64,000 bases of DNA, taken from the IMG/VR virus record IMGVR_UViG_3300034358_000008, positions 124,001 to 188,000 of that record. The stretch is one strand, 5' to 3'. The translations under genes were made by a program, and so were the position numbers. Shown piece after piece: positions 2,829-53,310 of the stretch; the first letter of the stretch is position 1; each line of letters starts with the position of its first letter. Under the pieces are notes generated by a model. The model worked only from the letters and a program-made list of their open reading frames with translations. It did not search any database and was not told where the DNA came from.

Positions 2829-4517
2829 ATGCAGCATTTCAACACTGGCGCTACCGTAGGTAACTCTCCAGGCAACACTAAGATTCGTTTTGGTGAGAAT
2901 GGTTTCATTGCAGTTCAGACTGGTACCTATCAGGCTCAATATCTTCGGCCATTTAACCCGAACACTAACGAGAACGTTGTACGTCAACTTCGTGAAGCTA
3001 CTAACGAAGGTCTTAACCTCGGTGTCAGTGCAGTACAAGAGATTGCGGCAAACGTAATCACCCCAGCATCGATGGTTGAAGGCGAGGTAATGATTCCTGA
3101 AGGTTTCACTTCTCGTCGTTTCCGCATTATGTGTCGTGTCTTCGAAGAGCATCCGTTCTTCAAAGGTGCAACTACCCAACGGATCTTCTATGGTTATTCG
3201 GATCACTGCGATGCAACTTTGCAAAGCGGTCTCATGGACCCACGCATGCGGGTTTACTTCAACTCCGAAACCATCGTAGCTGAATCGATCATCAACACGC
3301 CTAACGGTCCTCAGACTCAAGCTAAGATCATCGGCTCTAACCAGATCATCTCTCCGGTGAACATGGTTGGTGGTGACAATGGAATGTTCGCGAAGCCTTC
3401 CAGCTTCCTGATCCGTCCTGAAGATAACTTCAACAAAATGCAAACTCGTGCTGTTGCAGAGAACCTGCAAAAGACTGGTTTGATCGATGTCAAGATCGAT
3501 GCTGAATACGATCACCGCACTATGGTTGGTGAAGGTGGCTCGTTCAAGTATTCGATGCGTAAGGATACTTCTCCAGTTCGTTATCTGTCGAGTTCGTTGA
3601 GTGCATATCAGCATGCTCGTAAAGAGTACAACTCGTCGACTCATGACACTGATGACATCCTGTTCAATCGCGGTACTGATTCTTCGGAAGTATTGTTTGG
3701 TGAAGCTGCGGCAATGTGTCGTAACAGTTCCATCACTAACAACACCTTCCTGCAAGTTCTGCGTGACCACACCGGTTACATGGAAAAGGGTTTTGTATTG
3801 TGGGGTGAGCTGTGTGGCTTGTTCCCAGAACTGATGCAGACCAACGTTGCTCGTTTCGCAATGGATGATGGTCGTAGCATCAAGCAAGTTTCCCATGCTG
3901 GTCAATCCCAGAACTGGAACGGCGCTGACTATACTTCTATCGGTGCATCGCTGTTGGCTCAAACCATTCCATCGATTATGATGGATACGTTCTTGCGTCA
4001 AGTATCGTTCGCTGTAACGAATGGTAATGGTCCGAATGAATATCTGTTCGAGATCCATGGTCAAGCATCTGCCAGTATCATCCGTGGGATTGACATGCGT
4101 CCATATCTGCTGGAGATGGAACGTCGAGTTAAGGTTGACGTACTGCACAACATCACCCGTGGTAACCAACTGCCATTCCGTATCTCTATGATCTCGGACT
4201 TGGCTGGTGAATCGATCATTGACATCTCGATTGGTAACGAAGCAGTAGAACGTTTCGTAGCACCGACCTTTGCTGATAGTCTGTTCTCCCCAGTTATCAC
4301 ACGTAACCATCAGCTATCTAGTAACATCGCTAACGATATTACTTGGTTGGTTAAGAAGGTTATCGATGGTGATAACGATGTTAGTAACTTCAATCAGTTT
4401 AACGCTCAACAGCAAGGCTATCAAGGGTACCAACATCCAGTAGCACAAGCTGCACAATTCAATCCTCAAATCTTTACCGGAGTGAGCAACAATGTCGCCG
4501 ATCTTGGTCTCCTATAA
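2829..4517 (+). CDS. picA: PicA/Imp1-like phage-nucleus protein import factor (phiKZ gp69-like)
   Basis: 562 aa; directly after the gp68-like gene; Q/N-rich C-terminal tail; SD GAGG. Assignment by synteny. Confidence 0.7.
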   Translation: MQHFNTGATVGNSPGNTKIRFGENGFIAVQTGTYQAQYLRPFNPNTNENVVRQLREATNEGLNLGVSAVQEIAANVITPASMVEGEVMIPEGFTSRRFRIMCRVFEEHPFFKGATTQRIFYGYSDHCDATLQSGLMDPRMRVYFNSETIVAESIINTPNGPQTQAKIIGSNQIISPVNMVGGDNGMFAKPSSFLIRPEDNFNKMQTRAVAENLQKTGLIDVKIDAEYDHRTMVGEGGSFKYSMRKDTSPVRYLSSSLSAYQHARKEYNSSTHDTDDILFNRGTDSSEVLFGEAAAMCRNSSITNNTFLQVLRDHTGYMEKGFVLWGELCGLFPELMQTNVARFAMDDGRSIKQVSHAGQSQNWNGADYTSIGASLLAQTIPSIMMDTFLRQVSFAVTNGNGPNEYLFEIHGQASASIIRGIDMRPYLLEMERRVKVDVLHNITRGNQLPFRISMISDLAGESIIDISIGNEAVERFVAPTFADSLFSPVITRNHQLSSNIANDITWLVKKVIDGDNDVSNFNQFNAQQQGYQGYQHPVAQAAQFNPQIFTGVSNNVADLGLL

Positions 4518-48348: not shown

Positions 48349-48942
48349 ATGTCCGCCGAGCATTTCAAACTGTGTAAACGTTATACCCCTGCATGGCGTT
48401 TATTTAACCTTCGATTTAAATGCATGGCGAGTTGTTTGACCGAGGTAACTACCGAGTACCTAGCCAGTGGCAATGCTATCATGAACGTCACTGGTAACAA
48501 ACAAGTCGATACTTTGGCAATGGGGCGGATGGAGTATAAGAACTTCACCGCTGCGGCGCTAGCCATGTTGATATCCGAAGGTCACTCATTCGCTATCACG
48601 AACCTGAACGACTGTATCCAGATGTATGCTGATATTCAGGATCACTTGAACGATATGTTGCAGGCTGCTAAACAAGCGTTTCACTTAAGCGATCTGCCAC
48701 CGGTGGAAGACCTCCGTTCATTCGAATCTCTGGCTCTAGAAGTTTATCGAGTAGCTAAAAAGCTAGAGCCTAGAGCCGAAGTACGATCCAGTATCTTTGA
48801 CTCTTTCGTTGAGATGTCCCGTAGACGTAACTTGATGGCTACCAACAAATACGTTACTTCGTTGGATGCTCGTGAAAATGAACTGCGTCCGTATGTGTCC
48901 ATCGTGGATGACATTGAACGCTACATGGCGGAGCTTTACTAA
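48349..48942 (+). CDS. Conserved protein (phiKZ gp100-like)
   Basis: 197 aa; SD GAGGA; PPVEDL motif; synteny. Confidence 0.65.
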   Translation: MSAEHFKLCKRYTPAWRLFNLRFKCMASCLTEVTTEYLASGNAIMNVTGNKQVDTLAMGRMEYKNFTAAALAMLISEGHSFAITNLNDCIQMYADIQDHLNDMLQAAKQAFHLSDLPPVEDLRSFESLALEVYRVAKKLEPRAEVRSSIFDSFVEMSRRRNLMATNKYVTSLDARENELRPYVSIVDDIERYMAELY

Positions 48943-50321
48943 TGTCTTATGATTCAACGTTACTTAACAAAGCCGCTGAACGTGTGGTCAATGATGGCGA
49001 AGGTTACTACAACACCCGCATGAGTATTAACATTCGTGCTGGCGGTAAGTGGATTAAGCCTAACCGTTTTGACCACCAACATATCGCGCGAGATTACAGT
49101 ACTGGTCCTCTAGGGGATATTCGTCAGATTGAGGTATTGATGTTGTTGGGTGATTACACCTACGATATCTTGCCTTATCGTGATAACCTCATGGTGGACA
49201 TAAATGAAACCCCGCTTGTTATGGGTACTAGTGCCCGTAACTGGGAACGCTTTGCCGGTACTAAACGGTTTAAAGCTGTGTTGGACCTACAAGGGCAAGA
49301 CAACACAACCCTAACCAACAAGCAAGCCCCAATGACCAGCCGTGAGCAGATGAACCAAGTCGGTATGAAGTCAGTCGTATTCACTTTGGTAGATGAGTTG
49401 TGTTATAAACTCATGATGCTGACTGTGGGTGTTACGCTACGTCAAATGACAACACTCGATATGCTTACATGGATTCACAAGCATTACTTCGATCAGGTCT
49501 TTGATGGTTCGAACAAACGTATCGAAACCTTAAACATATGGAAGCAAGACTTTAACCCTGAGATACAACACCAGATTGCTTTCCCTGATGGGATGCTATT
49601 GAAAGACGTAACCAAGTTCCTACAGAACGACGAAGCGGGTATCTACCCAACCGGGTGTGGTCGTTATATCCAGAATGGTCAATTCTACGTTTATCCCCTG
49701 TTTGATACAACTCGATACCAGAAGCATTCCAAAGTCCTCAACATTATCAACATGCCTAACGAACGATTCAAAGGTACTGAGAAAACATTCCTTGATACCA
49801 CACGATCCCTAACGATTATTTGTACGGGTGGTAACACGAGTGAAGACTCATCCACCAGTAAGAATATTCAAGACGGCAATGGTTTTCGTTTTGGTGATGC
49901 CAAGAAGCTTTTGCAGATGGGTACTATCAAAGACAACCGAATGCTGATTGACCGAGCTACTAACCTTTTCGAGGTGGCTACTGAAGCACTCGCTGAAGGT
50001 ATCAACAACGTACGCTGGGCAGCTGATCGCTTTACTGGTAACCCATTGAAGCAGTACACGCAGATGGCTCAGAAACGTGGACAGAAGCTGGACGTGGAAT
50101 GGTTCCGCTCTAACCCCGACCTCTTAGAACCCGGCATGCCTGTTAAGTACCAGACTTTGGATGGTAATACAGTTAAGACCTACTACGGTACGCTATTGGG
50201 TGTGAACGATAACCGCATCCCAACTGATGGCGGTAACAACACATCCAAATATGACGGTATCGCTAACCTGAGTTTGTTCTTGGTTCGTGCTACTGAAAAT
50301 GAACGTGTAACGATTGCATGA
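48942..50321 (+). CDS. Baseplate hub-like virion protein (phiKZ gp101-like)
   Basis: 459 aa; TAATG coupling; C-terminal DLLEPGMPV is typical of hub proteins. Confidence 0.65.
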   Translation: MSYDSTLLNKAAERVVNDGEGYYNTRMSINIRAGGKWIKPNRFDHQHIARDYSTGPLGDIRQIEVLMLLGDYTYDILPYRDNLMVDINETPLVMGTSARNWERFAGTKRFKAVLDLQGQDNTTLTNKQAPMTSREQMNQVGMKSVVFTLVDELCYKLMMLTVGVTLRQMTTLDMLTWIHKHYFDQVFDGSNKRIETLNIWKQDFNPEIQHQIAFPDGMLLKDVTKFLQNDEAGIYPTGCGRYIQNGQFYVYPLFDTTRYQKHSKVLNIINMPNERFKGTEKTFLDTTRSLTIICTGGNTSEDSSTSKNIQDGNGFRFGDAKKLLQMGTIKDNRMLIDRATNLFEVATEALAEGINNVRWAADRFTGNPLKQYTQMAQKRGQKLDVEWFRSNPDLLEPGMPVKYQTLDGNTVKTYYGTLLGVNDNRIPTDGGNNTSKYDGIANLSLFLVRATENERVTIA

Positions 50322-50736
50322 CGTGGAGACCGCGATGAACATTTTGATACACATTGATTCGTCGTGGTCATACCACTTTTTCGAATTCAACAAACCTGCG
50401 ATTAGTACCCTAGATTTCTTTGAGTTCATAGACACGTTCTATAGCTCAGCAATGCTCTACCTGCAAACCCATGTTAACCATCGTTTCGGTTTACGTGCAC
50501 CTGAGTACAATGACGGCATAAATGGCTCCATGCAAATTTGCAATAAGTACCCAGAGTTAGCAGAAAAGATCTCTCAGGCCTTCAGAGATTTGCATCACCG
50601 ACATAGACCATCATTGGGTGCCCTGCAAGGCCCTATAACGAAGATACAGACGATTTGCGATGACACGGGTATACTGACTGCCATTGTAGTCACCATTGAT
50701 ATTAGAAGCAGTTTAACGCCTATATTACACTTGTGA
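50314..50736 (+). CDS. Hypothetical protein (140 aa)
   Basis: TTG start overlapping the previous stop; start position uncertain. Confidence 0.5.
   Translation: MHDVETAMNILIHIDSSWSYHFFEFNKPAISTLDFFEFIDTFYSSAMLYLQTHVNHRFGLRAPEYNDGINGSMQICNKYPELAEKISQAFRDLHHRHRPSLGALQGPITKIQTICDDTGILTAIVVTIDIRSSLTPILHL
50703..50736 (+). promoter_or_regulatory. Early promoter TAGAA-N13-TATATTAC-N4-GTGA
   Basis: TATATTAC at 50721-50728. Confidence 0.8.
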
Positions 50737-50756
50737 ACTTACAGGAGTAATGACCT

Positions 50757-50924
50757 ATGGATAAGGCTACAATTGCGTACGAGAAAGCTCATCAAAAAGC
50801 GATCGAGCATCATTGGAAAGAAAATGTCATGAATGACCGCACGGTCAGACTGATAACCCCAGTGCGTGTAGCTGTAACGTTTGTTGTAACGCTGTTAATA
50901 ACTTTCTACTTTAATGGTTTATGA
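50757..50924 (+). CDS. Small membrane protein (55 aa, not in ORF track)
   Basis: SD AGGAG; MDKATIAYEK...VAVTFVVTLLITFYFNGL; first ORF after the promoter. Confidence 0.55.
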   Translation: MDKATIAYEKAHQKAIEHHWKENVMNDRTVRLITPVRVAVTFVVTLLITFYFNGL

Positions 50925-50934
50925 GGTAAGCATC

Positions 50935-51108
50935 ATGTTCGGCAATTTCTACGATGAAAAGAAATCCAAAGAAGCTAACGCAGAAGAATTCGCGAAGGCA
51001 CATCACAACAAAGAAGTAACCCAGCACTACGTCATTGCAGTGGCGTTGTTCACTGGTCTGTGTGCAGCAATCGTTGCCGGTAAGAAGGTGTACGACGAAG
51101 TAAGATAA
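50935..51108 (+). CDS. Small membrane protein
   Basis: ATG at 50935 after GAGG; C-terminal hydrophobic helix. Confidence 0.6.
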   Translation: MFGNFYDEKKSKEANAEEFAKAHHNKEVTQHYVIAVALFTGLCAAIVAGKKVYDEVR

Positions 51109-51122
51109 GGATGCCCAATTAG

Positions 51123-51878
51123 ATGAGTGAATATCAAACGACTCGTCCCAATGGTAGCCAATTCGTTGCATACGTGCTAACGCATACACAAAGTGGCAAA
51201 GTGTACGTCGGTAGCACATCAAACCTTCAGAGACGGATCTGGGAGCATCAGGGTAAATTAAAACGTGGTACTCACCATAATAGCGAGCTTCAGAAACTTT
51301 ACGATGCTAGTAATGAGATAGAATTTAATTCTTTCCCAGCACTGGATAACGTAACAGTCCTGGAACTGGAAAGAGATATTATCTCAGAATACGCCGTTAT
51401 GGGTAATGTGCTTAACGTTATTAGTGATCCTGTTAATCCATCAGTTACTAATCCTCCTTTGATTCAGTATCGCGATTCTATAGCTAAACGTGTCAGCATC
51501 GACGGTATTGAATATACGAGTATAAAACAGGCTGCGAAGACACTGAGTTACAGTAAACAGAAAATACAATATTGGTTAAAGAGTGTGAGCACTGCCCACG
51601 AGAATGTTTTCTACGTGGGATCGCCAAAAGAAATCTCTGTTACTGGACGGGTAAACCTATCTGAATTGGCTCGAGCCAATGGGTTATCTGTATCGACTGT
51701 TACAGCACGGAAAAGAACGGGTGTATCGGCAGATGAGTTATTTCTACCGGTCGTCGATTCAACCGTGAAAAAGCTTTCTGACTATCTTGGTTTGAACTAT
51801 TCAAAAATTTGGTATCAACTAAATACAAAGGGACTGTCACCCAATGAAATAATACAGAAGTATTTAAGTGAGTCAAAT
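51123..51878 (+). mobile_element. Homing-endonuclease insertion (GIY-YIG, NUMOD1/HTH)
   Basis: Motifs above; appears more AT-rich than the core genes by eye. Confidence 0.6.
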
Positions 51879-52373
51879 ATGACCAAAGAAAATGTCCAAT
51901 TCGTAATAGGTACCGATATCTTCAAACAGGATGGCGACCTTTACATAATCACGGTTAACTGTGTTGGTGTAATGGGGGCCGGATTAGCCAAATCTTTCAA
52001 AGAAGCCCATCCCGACCTATATGAACGCTATCGTCATGATTGTCGGATGAAGATTATTACAATCGGTAATCCTGTAATCTACACAGCTGATAACGGCAAG
52101 CACTACATGATGTTCCCTACTAAGGATCGCTGGCAAGATCCATCACTACCTGAATACATTTCCTCTGGCTTACAGTGGATGGTGGACTCGGTTGGTGAAG
52201 AAGGTGATATCGACCCGGCGTGGAAAATAGTAATCCCTCCTTTAGGGTGCGCTAACGGCGGGCTTAGTTTCGCAGACGTAAAAGAAAACATAAAACTCTT
52301 TGCTGGGCACATGCCTAATGAAGTTGTAGTGGTCTATCCTCCGTGGATGGAAACCACGAATGCATGGGATTAA
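51123..52373 (+). CDS. GIY-YIG homing endonuclease fused in frame to a DarG-like macrodomain
   Basis: VAY...KVYVGST...RR..EH...H.N..LQ and NUMOD1-like IDGIEYTSIKQAA; from Met253 (51879) TVNCVGVMGAGLA...FPTKDRW...PPLGCANGGL. Confidence 0.85.
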   Translation: MSEYQTTRPNGSQFVAYVLTHTQSGKVYVGSTSNLQRRIWEHQGKLKRGTHHNSELQKLYDASNEIEFNSFPALDNVTVLELERDIISEYAVMGNVLNVISDPVNPSVTNPPLIQYRDSIAKRVSIDGIEYTSIKQAAKTLSYSKQKIQYWLKSVSTAHENVFYVGSPKEISVTGRVNLSELARANGLSVSTVTARKRTGVSADELFLPVVDSTVKKLSDYLGLNYSKIWYQLNTKGLSPNEIIQKYLSESNMTKENVQFVIGTDIFKQDGDLYIITVNCVGVMGAGLAKSFKEAHPDLYERYRHDCRMKIITIGNPVIYTADNGKHYMMFPTKDRWQDPSLPEYISSGLQWMVDSVGEEGDIDPAWKIVIPPLGCANGGLSFADVKENIKLFAGHMPNEVVVVYPPWMETTNAWD

Positions 52374-52425
52374 CATAACGCCCCCGGCTAACGCTGGGGG
52401 TTTATGCCGTTACGAGGAGACAGTT

Positions 52426-52839
52426 GTGCGAATAAGCATTGGTGAACAAAGCAGTATCATGCAGATGTGGAATGAACTGAGTGAAGTACTCGGGTTCAAT
52501 GAGTTCGTTGATCCTACCGCTCATGCAGTCTCTAAGACTGTTAAAGATTTTCAAGAGATCGATGATGAGCTTAAACGTCGTCGTGAGCCGGTAAAGGAAG
52601 AGCGACCTTCGTGGTATTACCAAGCAGCTACTCGACCTTATCCGAAGGGGTATCGTTACCCGCAAGGTATGGGGATTGCTCGTGCAATCAAAGAAGAACG
52701 TATCGGTACACCGTTGGAACGCTTTGAGTGTTTCTACGAAGCTGAGACTGATGTGATACAAGAAGCAGTCAAAGAGAATCTGGGTGCACCGGGGTATATG
52801 TCGTACCGCGATGCTTGTAACACAGGCAGTTGGTATTAG
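52426..52839 (+). CDS. Hypothetical protein
   Basis: GTG at 52426 after GAGGAG; the ORF-track start lies before the intergenic hairpin. Confidence 0.6.
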   Translation: MRISIGEQSSIMQMWNELSEVLGFNEFVDPTAHAVSKTVKDFQEIDDELKRRREPVKEERPSWYYQAATRPYPKGYRYPQGMGIARAIKEERIGTPLERFECFYEAETDVIQEAVKENLGAPGYMSYRDACNTGSWY

Positions 52840-52870
52840 AAGCCAACTGAAGGCTATATTACTACTGTGA
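52837..52870 (+). promoter_or_regulatory. Early promoter TAGAA-N13-TATATTAC-N4-GTGA
   Basis: TATATTAC at 52855-52862. Confidence 0.8.
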
Positions 52871-52895
52871 ATTAACTTAACTGAAGGAATCTACC

Positions 52896-53222
52896 ATGTC
52901 TCAAAAAGTGAAACAAAAGCACGTCTATCAGATCTGCGAAGGCGAACTGGTATCTGCTGAAATCCTGTGGCCTGATCGGGAAGAAACCAAAGGTAAGTTC
53001 GTAGCTACCGGCATCATGGTTTTCCCAAACGGTGATCTGGGCGGTGAAGTTCGTACTTCCCTGATCGTCTCAGGCAGCAAAGAAGAAGGCCAGGTCGAAA
53101 CATTGAACTCGATCTATAAGTTCGTGGATCGCCCTGCCGACAAAGAGCAAACTGACAATGGCCTGTGGGGTGCAGTACGTCCCATGATGAGCCAAGAAGA
53201 GAAAGGTGAACAACATGCGTGA
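52896..53222 (+). CDS. Hypothetical early protein
   Basis: 108 aa; SD AAGGA; VRTSLIV...VETLNSIY motif common in small phage proteins. Confidence 0.7.
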   Translation: MSQKVKQKHVYQICEGELVSAEILWPDREETKGKFVATGIMVFPNGDLGGEVRTSLIVSGSKEEGQVETLNSIYKFVDRPADKEQTDNGLWGAVRPMMSQEEKGEQHA

Positions 53223-53310
53223 TCTGGTTAAAGGCTTGGTCGGTATCGTGGTTGTGGTGATTGCAGTACGGATTATCTACGAAGTGGTAGATGACGCCGT
53301 TAACGCATGA
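53215..53310 (+). CDS. Membrane microprotein (31 aa, not in ORF track)
   Basis: SD AAGGTG; MRDLVKGLVGIVVVVIAVRIIYEVVDDAVNA; ATGA overlap with the next gene. Confidence 0.55.
   Translation: MRDLVKGLVGIVVVVIAVRIIYEVVDDAVNA

What the first reader, a model, noticed from the sequence alone, without database searches (positions are those of the whole stretch)
51123..52373. GIY-YIG homing endonuclease fused in frame to a DarG-like macrodomain
Seen in sequence: residues 1-252 are GIY-YIG plus NUMOD1/HTH-like modules. Residues 253-416 (ATG at 51879, weak GAG SD) are a complete macrodomain with NCVGVMGAGLA, FPTKxxW and PPLGCxxGGL. No stop codon separates them. Established: DarG macrodomains remove thymidine-linked ADP-ribose added by DarT2. 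Inference: a mobile endonuclease inserted at the 5' end of the macrodomain gene. The fusion might give the nuclease a route into the phage nucleus or tether the hydrolase to DNA. With the NADAR-like gene, the phage may counter both DarTG1 and DarTG2.
Basis: partly seen in the sequence, partly recalled or inferred. Interest (0 to 1): 0.62.

Follow-up and report, generated by a model that had tools for sequence, protein, structure and literature searches.

The report
Homing endonuclease fused to phage AdfM
A selfish DNA-cutting gene has inserted in frame in front of the only anti-DarT2 macrodomain gene (AdfM) of a nucleus-forming jumbo phage, so the nuclease may ride into the phage nucleus on a protein known to be imported there.

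Summary
Window 51123..52373 (+) is one open 416-codon frame: an I-TevI-like GIY-YIG homing endonuclease (residues 1-252) joined to a DarG-type macrodomain (258-410).

The genome is a 325-kb chimallivirus from a peat metagenome, related to 201phi2-1. It encodes ChmA and PicA. The macrodomain is its single orthologue of PhiKZ gp104, published in 2026 as AdfM, a PicA-imported enzyme that removes DarT2 ADP-ribose from DNA.

Six relatives carry the gene alone, with a strong ribosome-binding site. Here 761 nt (51133-51893, AT-richer) replace the 30 nt that held that site and the start codon.

The join is not an assembly error. A 96%-identical contig from another study spans it without indels, and two short contigs from a wastewater run and a peat RNA run also cross it. 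An endonuclease-free allele lies in the same run as the 96% contig.

Among the 150 best hits in 1.84 billion proteins, one other combines the two domains. It is a related endonuclease inserted in frame inside the AdfM-like gene of an Erwinia/Salmonella-type chimallivirus.

The macrodomain is known; the fusion is a new variant. Import of the nuclease by hitchhiking is plausible and mirrors an engineered gp210-gp104 fusion, but it is untested. No NADAR gene was found.

The parts
2829..4514 (+). PicA homologue (nuclear import factor). Context showing that the phage has the import pathway that carries AdfM.
   Evidence: tblastn of 201phi2-1 gp125 (similar to phiKZ gp69) hits genome 126829-128514 at 69% identity. 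ChmA lies at genome 113878-115674 (66%), outside the window.
48942..50321 (+). Homologue of 201phi2-1 gp164 / phiKZ gp101 virion protein. Left synteny anchor of the adfM locus.
   Evidence: 71% identity to gp164 by tblastn. The same gene order occurs in L001, L002, L005, L006 and L018-L020.
50935..51108 (+). gp166 homologue (57 aa), the last resident gene before the insertion. Its TAA stop is at 51106-51108.
   Evidence: DNA alignment A2 and the ORF lists.
51107..51111 (+). AAGGA Shine-Dalgarno-like element, 11 nt upstream of the fusion ORF's ATG. The closest endonuclease-free relative has AACCATTG here.
   Evidence: Predicted anti-SD duplex -6.0 kcal/mol; comparison with L018. An endonuclease-free contig in run X2 has a 3-nt insertion at 51106/51107.
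51114..51132 (+). Resident conserved motif (CCCAATTAGATGAGTGAAT) that ends at the left junction of the insertion. It supplies the ATG (51123) and the first three codons of the fusion ORF.
   Evidence: Shared with L018. Its core CAATTAGATGAG is also in Viktualia and 201phi2-1, and AATTAGATGAG in Phabio and L020; L019 has AATTAGATGAA. It is single-copy in the genome.
51123..52373 (+). Fusion ORF of 416 aa: GIY-YIG homing endonuclease joined to AdfM macrodomain. It holds the only macrodomain in the genome.
51133..51893 (+). Inserted mobile segment (761 nt). It replaces 30 nt of the endonuclease-free allele that held the SD (GGAGA/GGAGG) and the ATG of adfM. GC is 40.5% (GC3 36%), against about 45-46% in the flanks.
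   Evidence: Junctions come from the comparison with L018, L001 and L002; composition.
51168..51416 (+). GIY-YIG catalytic domain (residues 16-98). Y17, Y28, R38, H42, H51, N53, E83 and N98 are conserved.
   Evidence: Pfam PF01541; alignment to I-TevI 1mk0/1ln0; invariant columns in A6.
51471..51584 (+). I-TevI-type DNA-binding / NUMOD1 module (residues 117-154).
   Evidence: PF20987 E 1e-6 and PF07453.
51651..51869 (+). Two tandem HTH-like modules (residues 177-210 and 217-249). The second lies beyond the end of the closest free-standing homologue.
   Evidence: Weak HTH Pfam hits; P0146 ends at about residue 218 in A6; repeat seen; helices 179-252 in the model.
51879..51881 (+). Internal in-frame ATG (M253), a possible second start for a stand-alone 164-aa AdfM with a weak SD.
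51894..52352 (+). AdfM / DarG2-like macrodomain (residues 258-410). Catalytic N279 is at 51957-51959 and K334 at 52122-52124. The region matching the PhiKZ gp104 import-recognition segment is residues 333-351.
   Evidence: pLDDT 95-98. DarG macrodomains are the top matches by sequence and by fold, TM 0.87. Alignment with PhiKZ-type, PhiPA3, Phabio, 201phi2-1 and Viktualia orthologues. 90% aa identity to L018.

Best explanation
Shown: the window comes from a 201phi2-1-like nucleus-forming jumbo phage (chimallivirus). Its single adfM gene is the orthologue of PhiKZ gp104, a DarG2-like macrodomain that strips DarT2 ADP-ribose from phage DNA inside the phage nucleus. An I-TevI-like GIY-YIG homing endonuclease gene has invaded this gene. 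The 761-nt insert sits between a conserved upstream motif and codon 2 of adfM. It removes adfM's own ribosome-binding site and start codon, and it is in frame at both ends. The result is one 416-codon ORF that starts at a resident ATG and ends at adfM's stop. The endonuclease keeps every catalytic residue. It is present or absent among close relatives, as expected of an active mobile element.

Inferred: the main product is the 46-kDa endonuclease-AdfM protein, translated from 51123 behind a newly present AAGGA. Some 18-kDa AdfM may also be made from M253. The folded AdfM moiety is recognised by the PicA import pathway and carries the nuclease across the nuclear shell. There the nuclease can cut endonuclease-free alleles of co-infecting relatives and copy itself in. 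The macrodomain keeps protecting the DNA against DarT2. Because the insert replaced adfM's translation signals, clean loss of the endonuclease would also silence adfM, which should stabilise the element in hosts that carry DarTG2.
For: Architecture and intact motifs.

AdfM/DarG identity. Function of the family: PMC13309987.

Chimallivirus identity (ChmA, PicA, nvRNAP).

Endonuclease-free alleles with a strong SD in six relatives, and exact junctions.

Foreign composition of the insert.

Only one macrodomain in the genome.

An independent 1272-nt contig at about 96% identity with 0 gaps spans 50763-52034. It lies in the same run as an endonuclease-free contig. Wastewater and peat-RNA contigs also cross the join.

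AAGGA is present upstream of the fusion start but absent in the endonuclease-free L018.

Literature: gp104 is imported as a folded protein through a surface region, not a terminal signal. C-terminal tags and a gp210 homing-endonuclease fusion are tolerated, and that fusion is lethal to PhiKZ through DNA cutting (PMC11087766). A chimallivirus homing endonuclease must be imported to act (PMC11620839).

A second, independent in-frame GIY-YIG insertion lies in the AdfM-like macro-SLOG gene of another chimallivirus lineage: P0220 against pEa_SNUABM_37 and SA002.
Against: No protein-level or localisation data exist for this phage.

M253 with a weak SD sits exactly at the domain boundary, so separate AdfM could be the functional form.

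A single in-frame join is not improbable by chance.

Free-standing GIY-YIG genes exist in chimalliviruses, including a second one in this genome, so fusion is not required for such genes to persist.

The linker between the last endonuclease helix and the first macrodomain strand is only about 5 residues. That could hinder folding or recognition.

The visible substitutions in the endonuclease half of the 96% relative are mostly non-synonymous (4 of 6), while those seen in the macrodomain are almost all synonymous (6 of 7). This is compatible with relaxed constraint on the nuclease.

My search for double-domain proteins was biased towards macrodomain partners, so recurrence at adfM is not an enrichment test.
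Confidence: 0.6

Rival explanations
1. Incidental read-through fusion. The endonuclease landed next to adfM and lost, or never had, a stop codon. Functional AdfM is made on its own from M253. The long form is a by-product that is neutral or slightly harmful, and nuclear import of the nuclease, if any, does not depend on AdfM.
For: An ATG with a GAG SD-like element lies exactly at the boundary. The chance of an in-frame, stop-free join is not small. Free-standing GIY-YIG genes occur in chimalliviruses. There are hints of relaxed constraint on the nuclease half.
Against: The strong native SD of adfM was replaced by a much weaker one (-4.9 against about -9 kcal/mol). An SD-like AAGGA appears upstream of the long ORF only in the endonuclease-bearing allele. 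The frame is kept without indels in a 4%-diverged relative. A second lineage carries an in-frame endonuclease inside its AdfM-like gene, where no simple internal restart would give the whole protein.
Confidence: 0.3
2. Domesticated DNA tether. The endonuclease's DNA-binding modules, with or without nuclease activity, now serve AdfM by holding the hydrolase on phage DNA. This would improve removal of ADP-ribose.
For: There is an extra duplicated HTH module next to the macrodomain, beyond the end of the closest free-standing homologue. The substrate of AdfM is DNA.
Against: All GIY-YIG catalytic residues are retained. Presence or absence varies among close relatives, as for a mobile element. AT-rich foreign composition suggests a recent arrival. 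Stand-alone AdfM is sufficient in PhiKZ.
Confidence: 0.07
3. Assembly or sequencing artefact. A chimeric join or a missed base hides a stop or a frameshift between two separate genes.
For: The genome is a metagenome assembly. The only full-length identical contig comes from the probable source sample.
Against: A contig from a different study spans the whole endonuclease and the join with 55 substitutions and 0 gaps. Contigs from a wastewater run (1 difference) and a peat RNA run (identical) also cross 51879. The other frames are closed throughout, so a frameshift would have to lie within about 15 nt of the join.
Confidence: 0.03

Closest known systems
AdfM (anti-DarT factor macro), PhiKZ gp104 / PhiPA3 gp108 / 201phi2-1 gp167 (Morgan et al., Cell Rep 2026, PMC13309987)
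   Same: It lies at the orthologous locus downstream of the gp164-gp166 homologues. It is 79-80% identical to 201phi2-1 and Viktualia and about 62% to PhiKZ-type proteins. It has a DarG-like fold. The catalytic Asn (PhiKZ N23 = N279) and the FPTK Lys (K334) are conserved. The genome has PicA and ChmA.
   Different: All described AdfM proteins are stand-alone proteins of about 160 aa with their own strong RBS. Here the gene has lost its RBS and start and is the C-terminal domain of a 416-aa protein headed by a homing endonuclease. The paper does not mention such fusions.
Engineered PhiPA3 gp210 (HNH homing endonuclease) fused to PhiKZ gp104 or GFPmut1 (Morgan et al., PNAS 2024, PMC11087766; Birkholz et al., Science 2024, PMC11620839)
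   Same: A site-specific homing endonuclease is joined to a nuclear-import cargo. In the experiments the fusion restricts PhiKZ, and only nuclease target-site escape mutants arise.
   Different: Those fusions are laboratory constructs with an HNH enzyme. This one is natural, uses a GIY-YIG enzyme, and is encoded at the cargo's own locus. Its import and cleavage are untested.
Free-standing GIY-YIG homing endonucleases of phages (I-TevI architecture; T4 Seg proteins)
   Same: An N-terminal GIY-YIG catalytic domain is followed by NUMOD1/I-TevI DNA-binding and HTH modules. It sits at an intergenic position next to a conserved gene. Presence varies among relatives. Composition is AT-rich.
   Different: It has no stop codon or start codon of its own. 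It is not in an intron (no Rfam match) and not in an intein (no Hint domain). The closest homologues are only 35-40% identical.
Bacterial DarG antitoxin of DarTG2
   Same: The macrodomain is the closest relative by sequence (E 7e-26 to Mtb DarG) and by structure. It has the same catalytic lysine motif.
   Different: It has no C-terminal DarT-binding domain, and the genome has no darT partner. It is a phage counter-defence enzyme, not an antitoxin.
P0220, a metagenomic chimallivirus protein of the Erwinia pEa_SNUABM_37 / Salmonella SA002 group
   Same: A GIY-YIG/I-TevI-type endonuclease, 32% identical to the one here, is translationally fused to a DarG-like macrodomain in a phage with split RNAP genes. 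An endonuclease-free allele exists in close relatives.
   Different: There the endonuclease is inserted inside the gene, in the linker between the macrodomain and the C-terminal region that ends in a YAcAr SLOG domain. It is not at the N-terminus, and the host lineage is different.

Membership tests
AdfM (chimallivirus DarG2-like macrodomain) | Macrodomain whose nearest solved relatives are DarG macrodomains | tested here: met
   phmmer against PDB: 5m3i E 7e-26, 5m31 E 2e-20, 7omu. Foldseek: 5m3i, 5m3e and 5m31 with TM 0.86-0.87 and rmsd 2.0-2.2 A, ahead of TARG1 and Poa1p.
AdfM (chimallivirus DarG2-like macrodomain) | Catalytic Asn (PhiKZ N23) and the FPTK lysine of DarG | tested here: met
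   N279 and K334 fall in invariant columns of alignment A5 with PhiKZ-type, PhiPA3, Phabio, 201phi2-1 and Viktualia and align with DarG.
AdfM (chimallivirus DarG2-like macrodomain) | Orthologous position in a chimallivirus genome that encodes ChmA and PicA | tested here: met
   Synteny of gp164h-gp165h-gp166h-adfM with 201phi2-1, Viktualia, Phabio, PhiPA3 and L018-L020. ChmA 66% and PicA 69% identical to 201phi2-1.
AdfM (chimallivirus DarG2-like macrodomain) | Imported into the phage nucleus; removes DarT2 ADP-ribose from TNTC ssDNA; rescues DarT2 toxicity | not testable with these tools
   Shown for PhiKZ, PhiPA3 and Asesino proteins in PMC13309987. Here it is only inferred from orthology.
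DarG antitoxin (DarTG2 toxin-antitoxin system) | C-terminal DarT-binding domain and an adjacent darT gene | tested here: not met
   The protein ends 6 residues after the macrodomain. No PF14487 match in the genome at E <= 1.
GIY-YIG homing endonuclease (I-TevI-like) | GIY-YIG catalytic residues (I-TevI Y6, Y17, R27, H31, H40, E75, N90) | tested here: met
   PF01541 E 1e-8. Alignment to 1mk0 covers the Y, Y, R, H and H residues. Y17, Y28, R38, H42, H51, N53, E83 and N98 are invariant across four homologues.
GIY-YIG homing endonuclease (I-TevI-like) | C-terminal modular DNA-binding region (NUMOD1 / I-TevI DNA-binding / HTH) | tested here: met
   PF20987 E 1e-6, PF07453 E 7e-4, HTH hits at 170-197.
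GIY-YIG homing endonuclease (I-TevI-like) | Presence/absence polymorphism at one locus among related genomes | tested here: met
   Absent in L018 (90% aa AdfM), L019, L020, 201phi2-1, Viktualia and Phabio. Endonuclease-bearing and endonuclease-free contigs occur in one run.
GIY-YIG homing endonuclease (I-TevI-like) | Cleaves the endonuclease-free allele near the insertion site | not testable with these tools
   Needs an in vitro cleavage or co-infection assay.
Intein-encoded or intron-encoded homing endonuclease | Hint/splicing domain flanking the nuclease, or a group I/II intron RNA around it | tested here: not met
   No Hint or intein Pfam family at E <= 1. No Rfam family at E <= 1 in 50300-52900.
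   Six-frame search of the 324,912-bp genome found no match at E <= 0.01 or E <= 10. The region of P0220 between its endonuclease insert and its SLOG domain also finds nothing.

The most novel reading that the evidence does not exclude
The fusion is a natural 'passport' strategy. A horizontally acquired homing endonuclease has no import surface of its own, so it enters the chimallivirus nucleus by being translated as one polypeptide with AdfM, a PicA-licensed cargo. Because AdfM recognition is phage-specific, the nuclease would be delivered only into nuclei of its own lineage and into hybrid nuclei. The same solution would then have arisen at least twice, N-terminal here and internal in the Erwinia/Salmonella-type phage. 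Replacing adfM's translation signals would also make the element hard to lose where DarTG2 is present.
Probability: 0.35. Interest if true: 0.8.

Novelty: new variant of a known kind. Interest (0 to 1): 0.58.

Why it matters
How proteins are chosen for import into the phage nucleus is an open question. So is how selfish or competitive nucleases reach DNA that the shell protects.

PhiKZ gp104 (AdfM) is the model cargo of the PicA pathway, and laboratory fusions of a homing endonuclease to it were used to probe that pathway. A natural endonuclease-AdfM fusion, with a second independent case in another chimallivirus lineage, would show that mobile elements exploit cargo hitchhiking in nature.

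It would also provide a ready-made pair of alleles, with and without the endonuclease, for testing import, homing and inter-phage competition. It would show how a counter-defence gene can be held hostage by a selfish element.

If the fusion is only incidental, the finding is still a clean example of a homing endonuclease that replaced the translation signals of an anti-DarT2 gene.

Tried and rejected
Searches that found nothing:
- Megablast of 50300-53300 against the phage records.
- The endonuclease half in IMG/VR contigs, JGI metagenome contigs and the word-indexed 5.8-billion protein set.
- A 26-nt pattern across the join in viral and metagenome contigs.
- A group I intron or any other Rfam family around the insert.
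- NADAR and DarT in the genome.

Ideas tested and dropped:
- A hidden frameshift giving an ATGA stop/start overlap at 51879. The +1 frame does hold TGA at 51880, but it is closed again 15 nt upstream and throughout the gene, and an independent contig shows no indel.
- The conserved upstream motif as a repeated promoter. It occurs once in the genome.
- The motif's ATG as the start of a conserved leader peptide. The short frames behind it differ in length and end among relatives.
- P0220's 462-aa neighbour as a gp164 homologue. There is no similarity. The contig is still chimallivirus-like by its UvsX-like and split RNAP genes and its match to SA002, pEa_SNUABM_37 and RAY.

Left unresolved:
- A one-base deletion at the old ATG (out-of-frame ATG at 51892-51894) could have created the fusion. 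The short alignment cannot decide this.
- Ten other proteins with N-terminal extensions before a DarG-like macrodomain were checked. Two carry DarT, one has a GNAT domain after the macrodomain, and seven have no other recognised domain. None has an endonuclease.
- The endonuclease half of the AlphaFold model is low-confidence because the alignment is shallow, so I used it only for domain boundaries.

Not run or not applicable:
- Complex prediction was not run. Direct PicA-AdfM binding is not claimed, and the tool's sensitivity for such pairs is low.
Full report
**1. The observation**

Window 51123..52373 (+) is one uninterrupted ORF of 416 codons. The other two forward frames carry a stop about every 30 nt across the whole span, so only this frame is coding.

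Pfam finds these domains:
- GIY-YIG at residues 16-90 (E 1e-8).
- The I-TevI DNA-binding domain and NUMOD1 at 117-154.
- Weak helix-turn-helix matches at about 170-197.
- Macro at 277-388 (E 9e-7).

PHROGs assigns the C-terminal part to phrog_335 (E 7e-39) and the N-terminal part to homing-endonuclease families. The description is correct.

**2. Which genome this is**

The window is bases 124001-188000 of a 324,912-bp IMG/VR virus record that CheckV rates complete. The record encodes homologues of three 201phi2-1 proteins:
- The nuclear shell protein ChmA (66% identity).
- The import factor PicA (69%; window 2829-4514).
- The non-virion RNA polymerase beta subunit (78%).

It is therefore a nucleus-forming jumbo phage (chimallivirus) of the 201phi2-1/Viktualia group. 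The run that holds it identically is a peat metagenome.

**3. The macrodomain half**

By sequence, the best solved relatives are DarG macrodomains:
- M. tuberculosis DarG, 5m3i, E 7e-26.
- T. aquaticus DarG, 5m31/5m3e, E 2e-20.
- The Thermosipho DarTG fusion, 7omu.

An AlphaFold model gives residues 261-410 a pLDDT of 95-98. Foldseek puts the same DarG structures first (TM 0.86-0.87, rmsd 2.0-2.2 A), ahead of TARG1 and Poa1p.

tblastn finds the domain as a stand-alone gene of about 160 aa in 261 phage records. These include Viktualia (80%), 201phi2-1 gp167 (79%, annotated as similar to phiKZ gp104), Phabio, PhiPA3 gp108 and the PhiKZ group.

This family was characterised in 2026 as AdfM. [quoted passage not shown]

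The catalytic Asn (PhiKZ N23) and the FPTK lysine correspond to N279 and K334 here and are invariant in the alignment. The genome has only this one macrodomain and no DarT. The protein has no DarG C-terminal domain. It is therefore an AdfM orthologue, not a DarG antitoxin.

**4. The endonuclease half**

Residues 17-66 align with the I-TevI catalytic domain (1mk0, 1ln0). In an alignment with three homologues, the positions matching the I-TevI catalytic residues are invariant: Y17, Y28, R38, H42, H51, N53, E83 and N98.

The closest relatives are distant:
- Best in 1.84 billion representative proteins: a free-standing 244-aa GIY-YIG protein, 37% identical (P0146).
- Best in the phage records: below 40% identity.

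P0146 ends at about residue 218 of the fusion. Residues 217-249 repeat the preceding HTH-like module (177-210), so one extra module bridges to the macrodomain. In the model, the last helix (240-252) is followed by only about five residues before the first macrodomain strand.

The segment has 40.5% GC (GC3 36%). The macrodomain part has 44.8% (GC3 46%) and the window 46.5%. This fits a foreign, mobile origin.

**5. The insertion event**

Gene order is the same in 201phi2-1, Viktualia, Phabio, PhiPA3 and three IMG/VR contigs: gp164 homologue, gp165 homologue, small ORFs, then adfM. None of them has the endonuclease.

The closest relative is L018, a 320,858-bp contig with 90% aa identity in AdfM and 82-87% nt identity in the flanks. 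It shares with the window a motif that ends at 51132 (CCCAATTAGATGAGTGAAT). Homology resumes at 51894, which is codon 2 of adfM (also alignment A2).

Between these points the window has 761 nt where L018 has 30 nt. Those 30 nt hold adfM's Shine-Dalgarno sequence (GGAGA; GGAGG in 201phi2-1) and its ATG.

The ATG and first three codons of the long ORF (ATG AGT GAA) are resident sequence. The insert is therefore in frame at both ends.

Predicted anti-SD pairing:
- Stand-alone adfM genes of four relatives: -8.4 to -9.3 kcal/mol.
- Internal M253: -4.9 kcal/mol.
- Fusion start at 51123: -6.0 kcal/mol, from an AAGGA 11 nt upstream.

That AAGGA is absent from L018, which has AACCATTG there. The endonuclease-free contig in run X2 shows a 3-nt insertion at this spot.

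No intron RNA and no intein domain surrounds the nuclease.

**6. Is the join real?**

I laid contigs of four public runs on 50700-52500 (1,801 letters).
- The peat run that is the probable source has an 89,611-nt contig identical to the window. This is not independent evidence.
- A 2025 run from another study (X2) has a 1,272-nt contig covering 50763-52034, which is the whole endonuclease and the join. It has 55 substitutions and no gaps (about 96% identity).
- None of the substitutions that the tool lists makes a stop. Six of the seven listed in the macrodomain are synonymous. Only part of the 55 are listed, so a stop is not fully excluded.
- The same run also has a lower-depth contig that joins 51132 to 51981 with about 117 nt in between. 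That is the length expected for an endonuclease-free allele. Both allele types therefore co-occur.
- A wastewater run has a 151-nt contig across 51842-51991 with one difference.
- A peat metatranscriptome has a 262-nt contig across 51836-52097 with none. Contigs from an RNA library do not prove transcription.

The 'hidden stop' refuter is thus answered as far as these data allow.

**7. How unusual is the architecture?**

An exhaustive HMMER search of 1.84 billion representatives with the full protein found no protein with the same layout. The top hit is a stand-alone AdfM. A word-indexed search of 5.8 billion proteins gave only DarG-like and other macrodomain proteins.

One hit, P0220 (683 aa), does combine the two domains. 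Its alignment shows that it is the 429-aa AdfM-like protein of Erwinia phage pEa_SNUABM_37, which has an N-terminal macrodomain and a C-terminal YAcAr SLOG domain. The flanks are about 85% identical. A GIY-YIG/I-TevI-type endonuclease of about 259 aa is inserted in frame in the linker after the macrodomain.

Its contig carries a UvsX-like gene and a split RNA polymerase beta gene. That gene is 96% identical to the one in Salmonella phage SA002 and 64% to the one in Erwinia phage RAY, so this is another chimallivirus lineage.

SA002 itself has a partial tandem duplication at exactly this place.

A GIY-YIG endonuclease has thus become translationally fused to the AdfM-type gene at least twice. 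I note the bias: my query could only find fusions that involve a macrodomain. Ten other proteins with N-terminal extensions before a DarG-like macrodomain had DarT, a GNAT domain or nothing recognisable, and no endonuclease.

**8. Mechanism**

Shown:
- An intact-looking homing endonuclease gene has replaced the translation signals of the phage's only adfM.
- It forms one ORF with adfM.
- The element is polymorphic among close relatives.

Established elsewhere:
- Import of gp104 depends on a folded protein and a surface region (PhiKZ residues 77-95, which correspond to 333-351 here), not on a terminal signal.
- Import is specific to the cognate phage.
- C-terminal fluorescent tags are tolerated.
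- A fusion of gp104 to the PhiPA3 homing endonuclease gp210 restricted PhiKZ, and the only escape mutants recovered had an altered nuclease target site (PMC11087766).
- gp210 is harmless to PhiKZ unless it is imported (PMC11620839).

Inferred:
- The long protein is the main product.
- AdfM carries the nuclease into the nucleus, where the nuclease cuts empty alleles in co-infecting relatives.
- AdfM stays active.
- Losing the element would silence adfM.

The main rival is that AdfM is made from M253 and the long form is incidental. A tethering role for the DNA-binding modules is possible but has no direct support.

**9.

The 'NADAR-like gene' is not supported. PF08719 finds nothing in the whole genome at E <= 10.

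**10. Verdict**

The macrodomain is a new member of a family that is already characterised. The in-frame homing-endonuclease fusion is a new variant that I did not find described. The AdfM paper does not mention it, and neither does a survey of viral ADP-ribose systems.

Its interest rests on the untested but well-motivated idea of cargo hitchhiking into the phage nucleus. All proposed tests are ordinary phage-bacterium experiments.

Noticed in passing
window 51114-51132: A motif (CCCAATTAGATGAGTGAAT) is conserved about 35-45 nt upstream of adfM in this clade: shared in full with L018, with its core in Viktualia, 201phi2-1, Phabio and L020 and a near-variant in L019. It is more conserved than the neighbouring coding DNA and occurs once in the genome. 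Its ATG opens short frames of varying length in relatives, and in L019 it is in frame with adfM (176-aa ORF). It may be a promoter, a 5' UTR element or the endonuclease's recognition region.
   Followed up: partly
window 50757-50924 and 50717-50740: An extra 55-aa ORF lies between the gp165 and gp166 homologues. A 55-aa ORF lies at the same place in L018 and an extra small ORF in Phabio; 201phi2-1 and Viktualia have none. Upstream is a TATATTAC-containing motif that is also conserved in the relatives. It resembles what I recall as the phiKZ-type early promoter, which I did not verify.
   Followed up: no
L012:629-2505 (Salmonella phage vB_SalM_SA002): The AdfM-like gene is split into two ORFs that share a duplicated stretch of about 190 aa, starting at macrodomain residue 102. 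This lies exactly where the related metagenomic phage (P0220, L010:2164-4215) carries its in-frame GIY-YIG insert. It looks like a scar of aberrant repair at an endonuclease target.
   Followed up: partly
G000:C1:290322-290573 (L004:1441-2229), outside the window: The same genome has a second GIY-YIG gene. It is free-standing (about 262-271 aa) and 35% identical to the fused one over the catalytic domain.
   Followed up: partly
window 51651-51869 (residues 177-249): The C-terminal HTH-like module of the endonuclease is duplicated in tandem. The second copy extends beyond the end of the closest free-standing homologue (P0146) and abuts the macrodomain.
   Followed up: partly
window 50763-52034 in run X2: One 2025 sequencing run from an unrelated study holds two alleles. 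One is an endonuclease-bearing allele about 96% identical to the window (depth about 51). The other is a more diverged endonuclease-free allele (depth about 9). Potential donor and recipient phages therefore co-occur.
   Followed up: partly
whole genome G000: There is no match to NADAR (PF08719) or DarT (PF14487) anywhere in the 325-kb genome, and only one macrodomain.
   Followed up: yes
window 51892-51894: An out-of-frame ATG sits exactly where the ancestral adfM start codon would align. A one-base deletion there could have created the fusion, but the alignment is too short to decide.
   Followed up: partly
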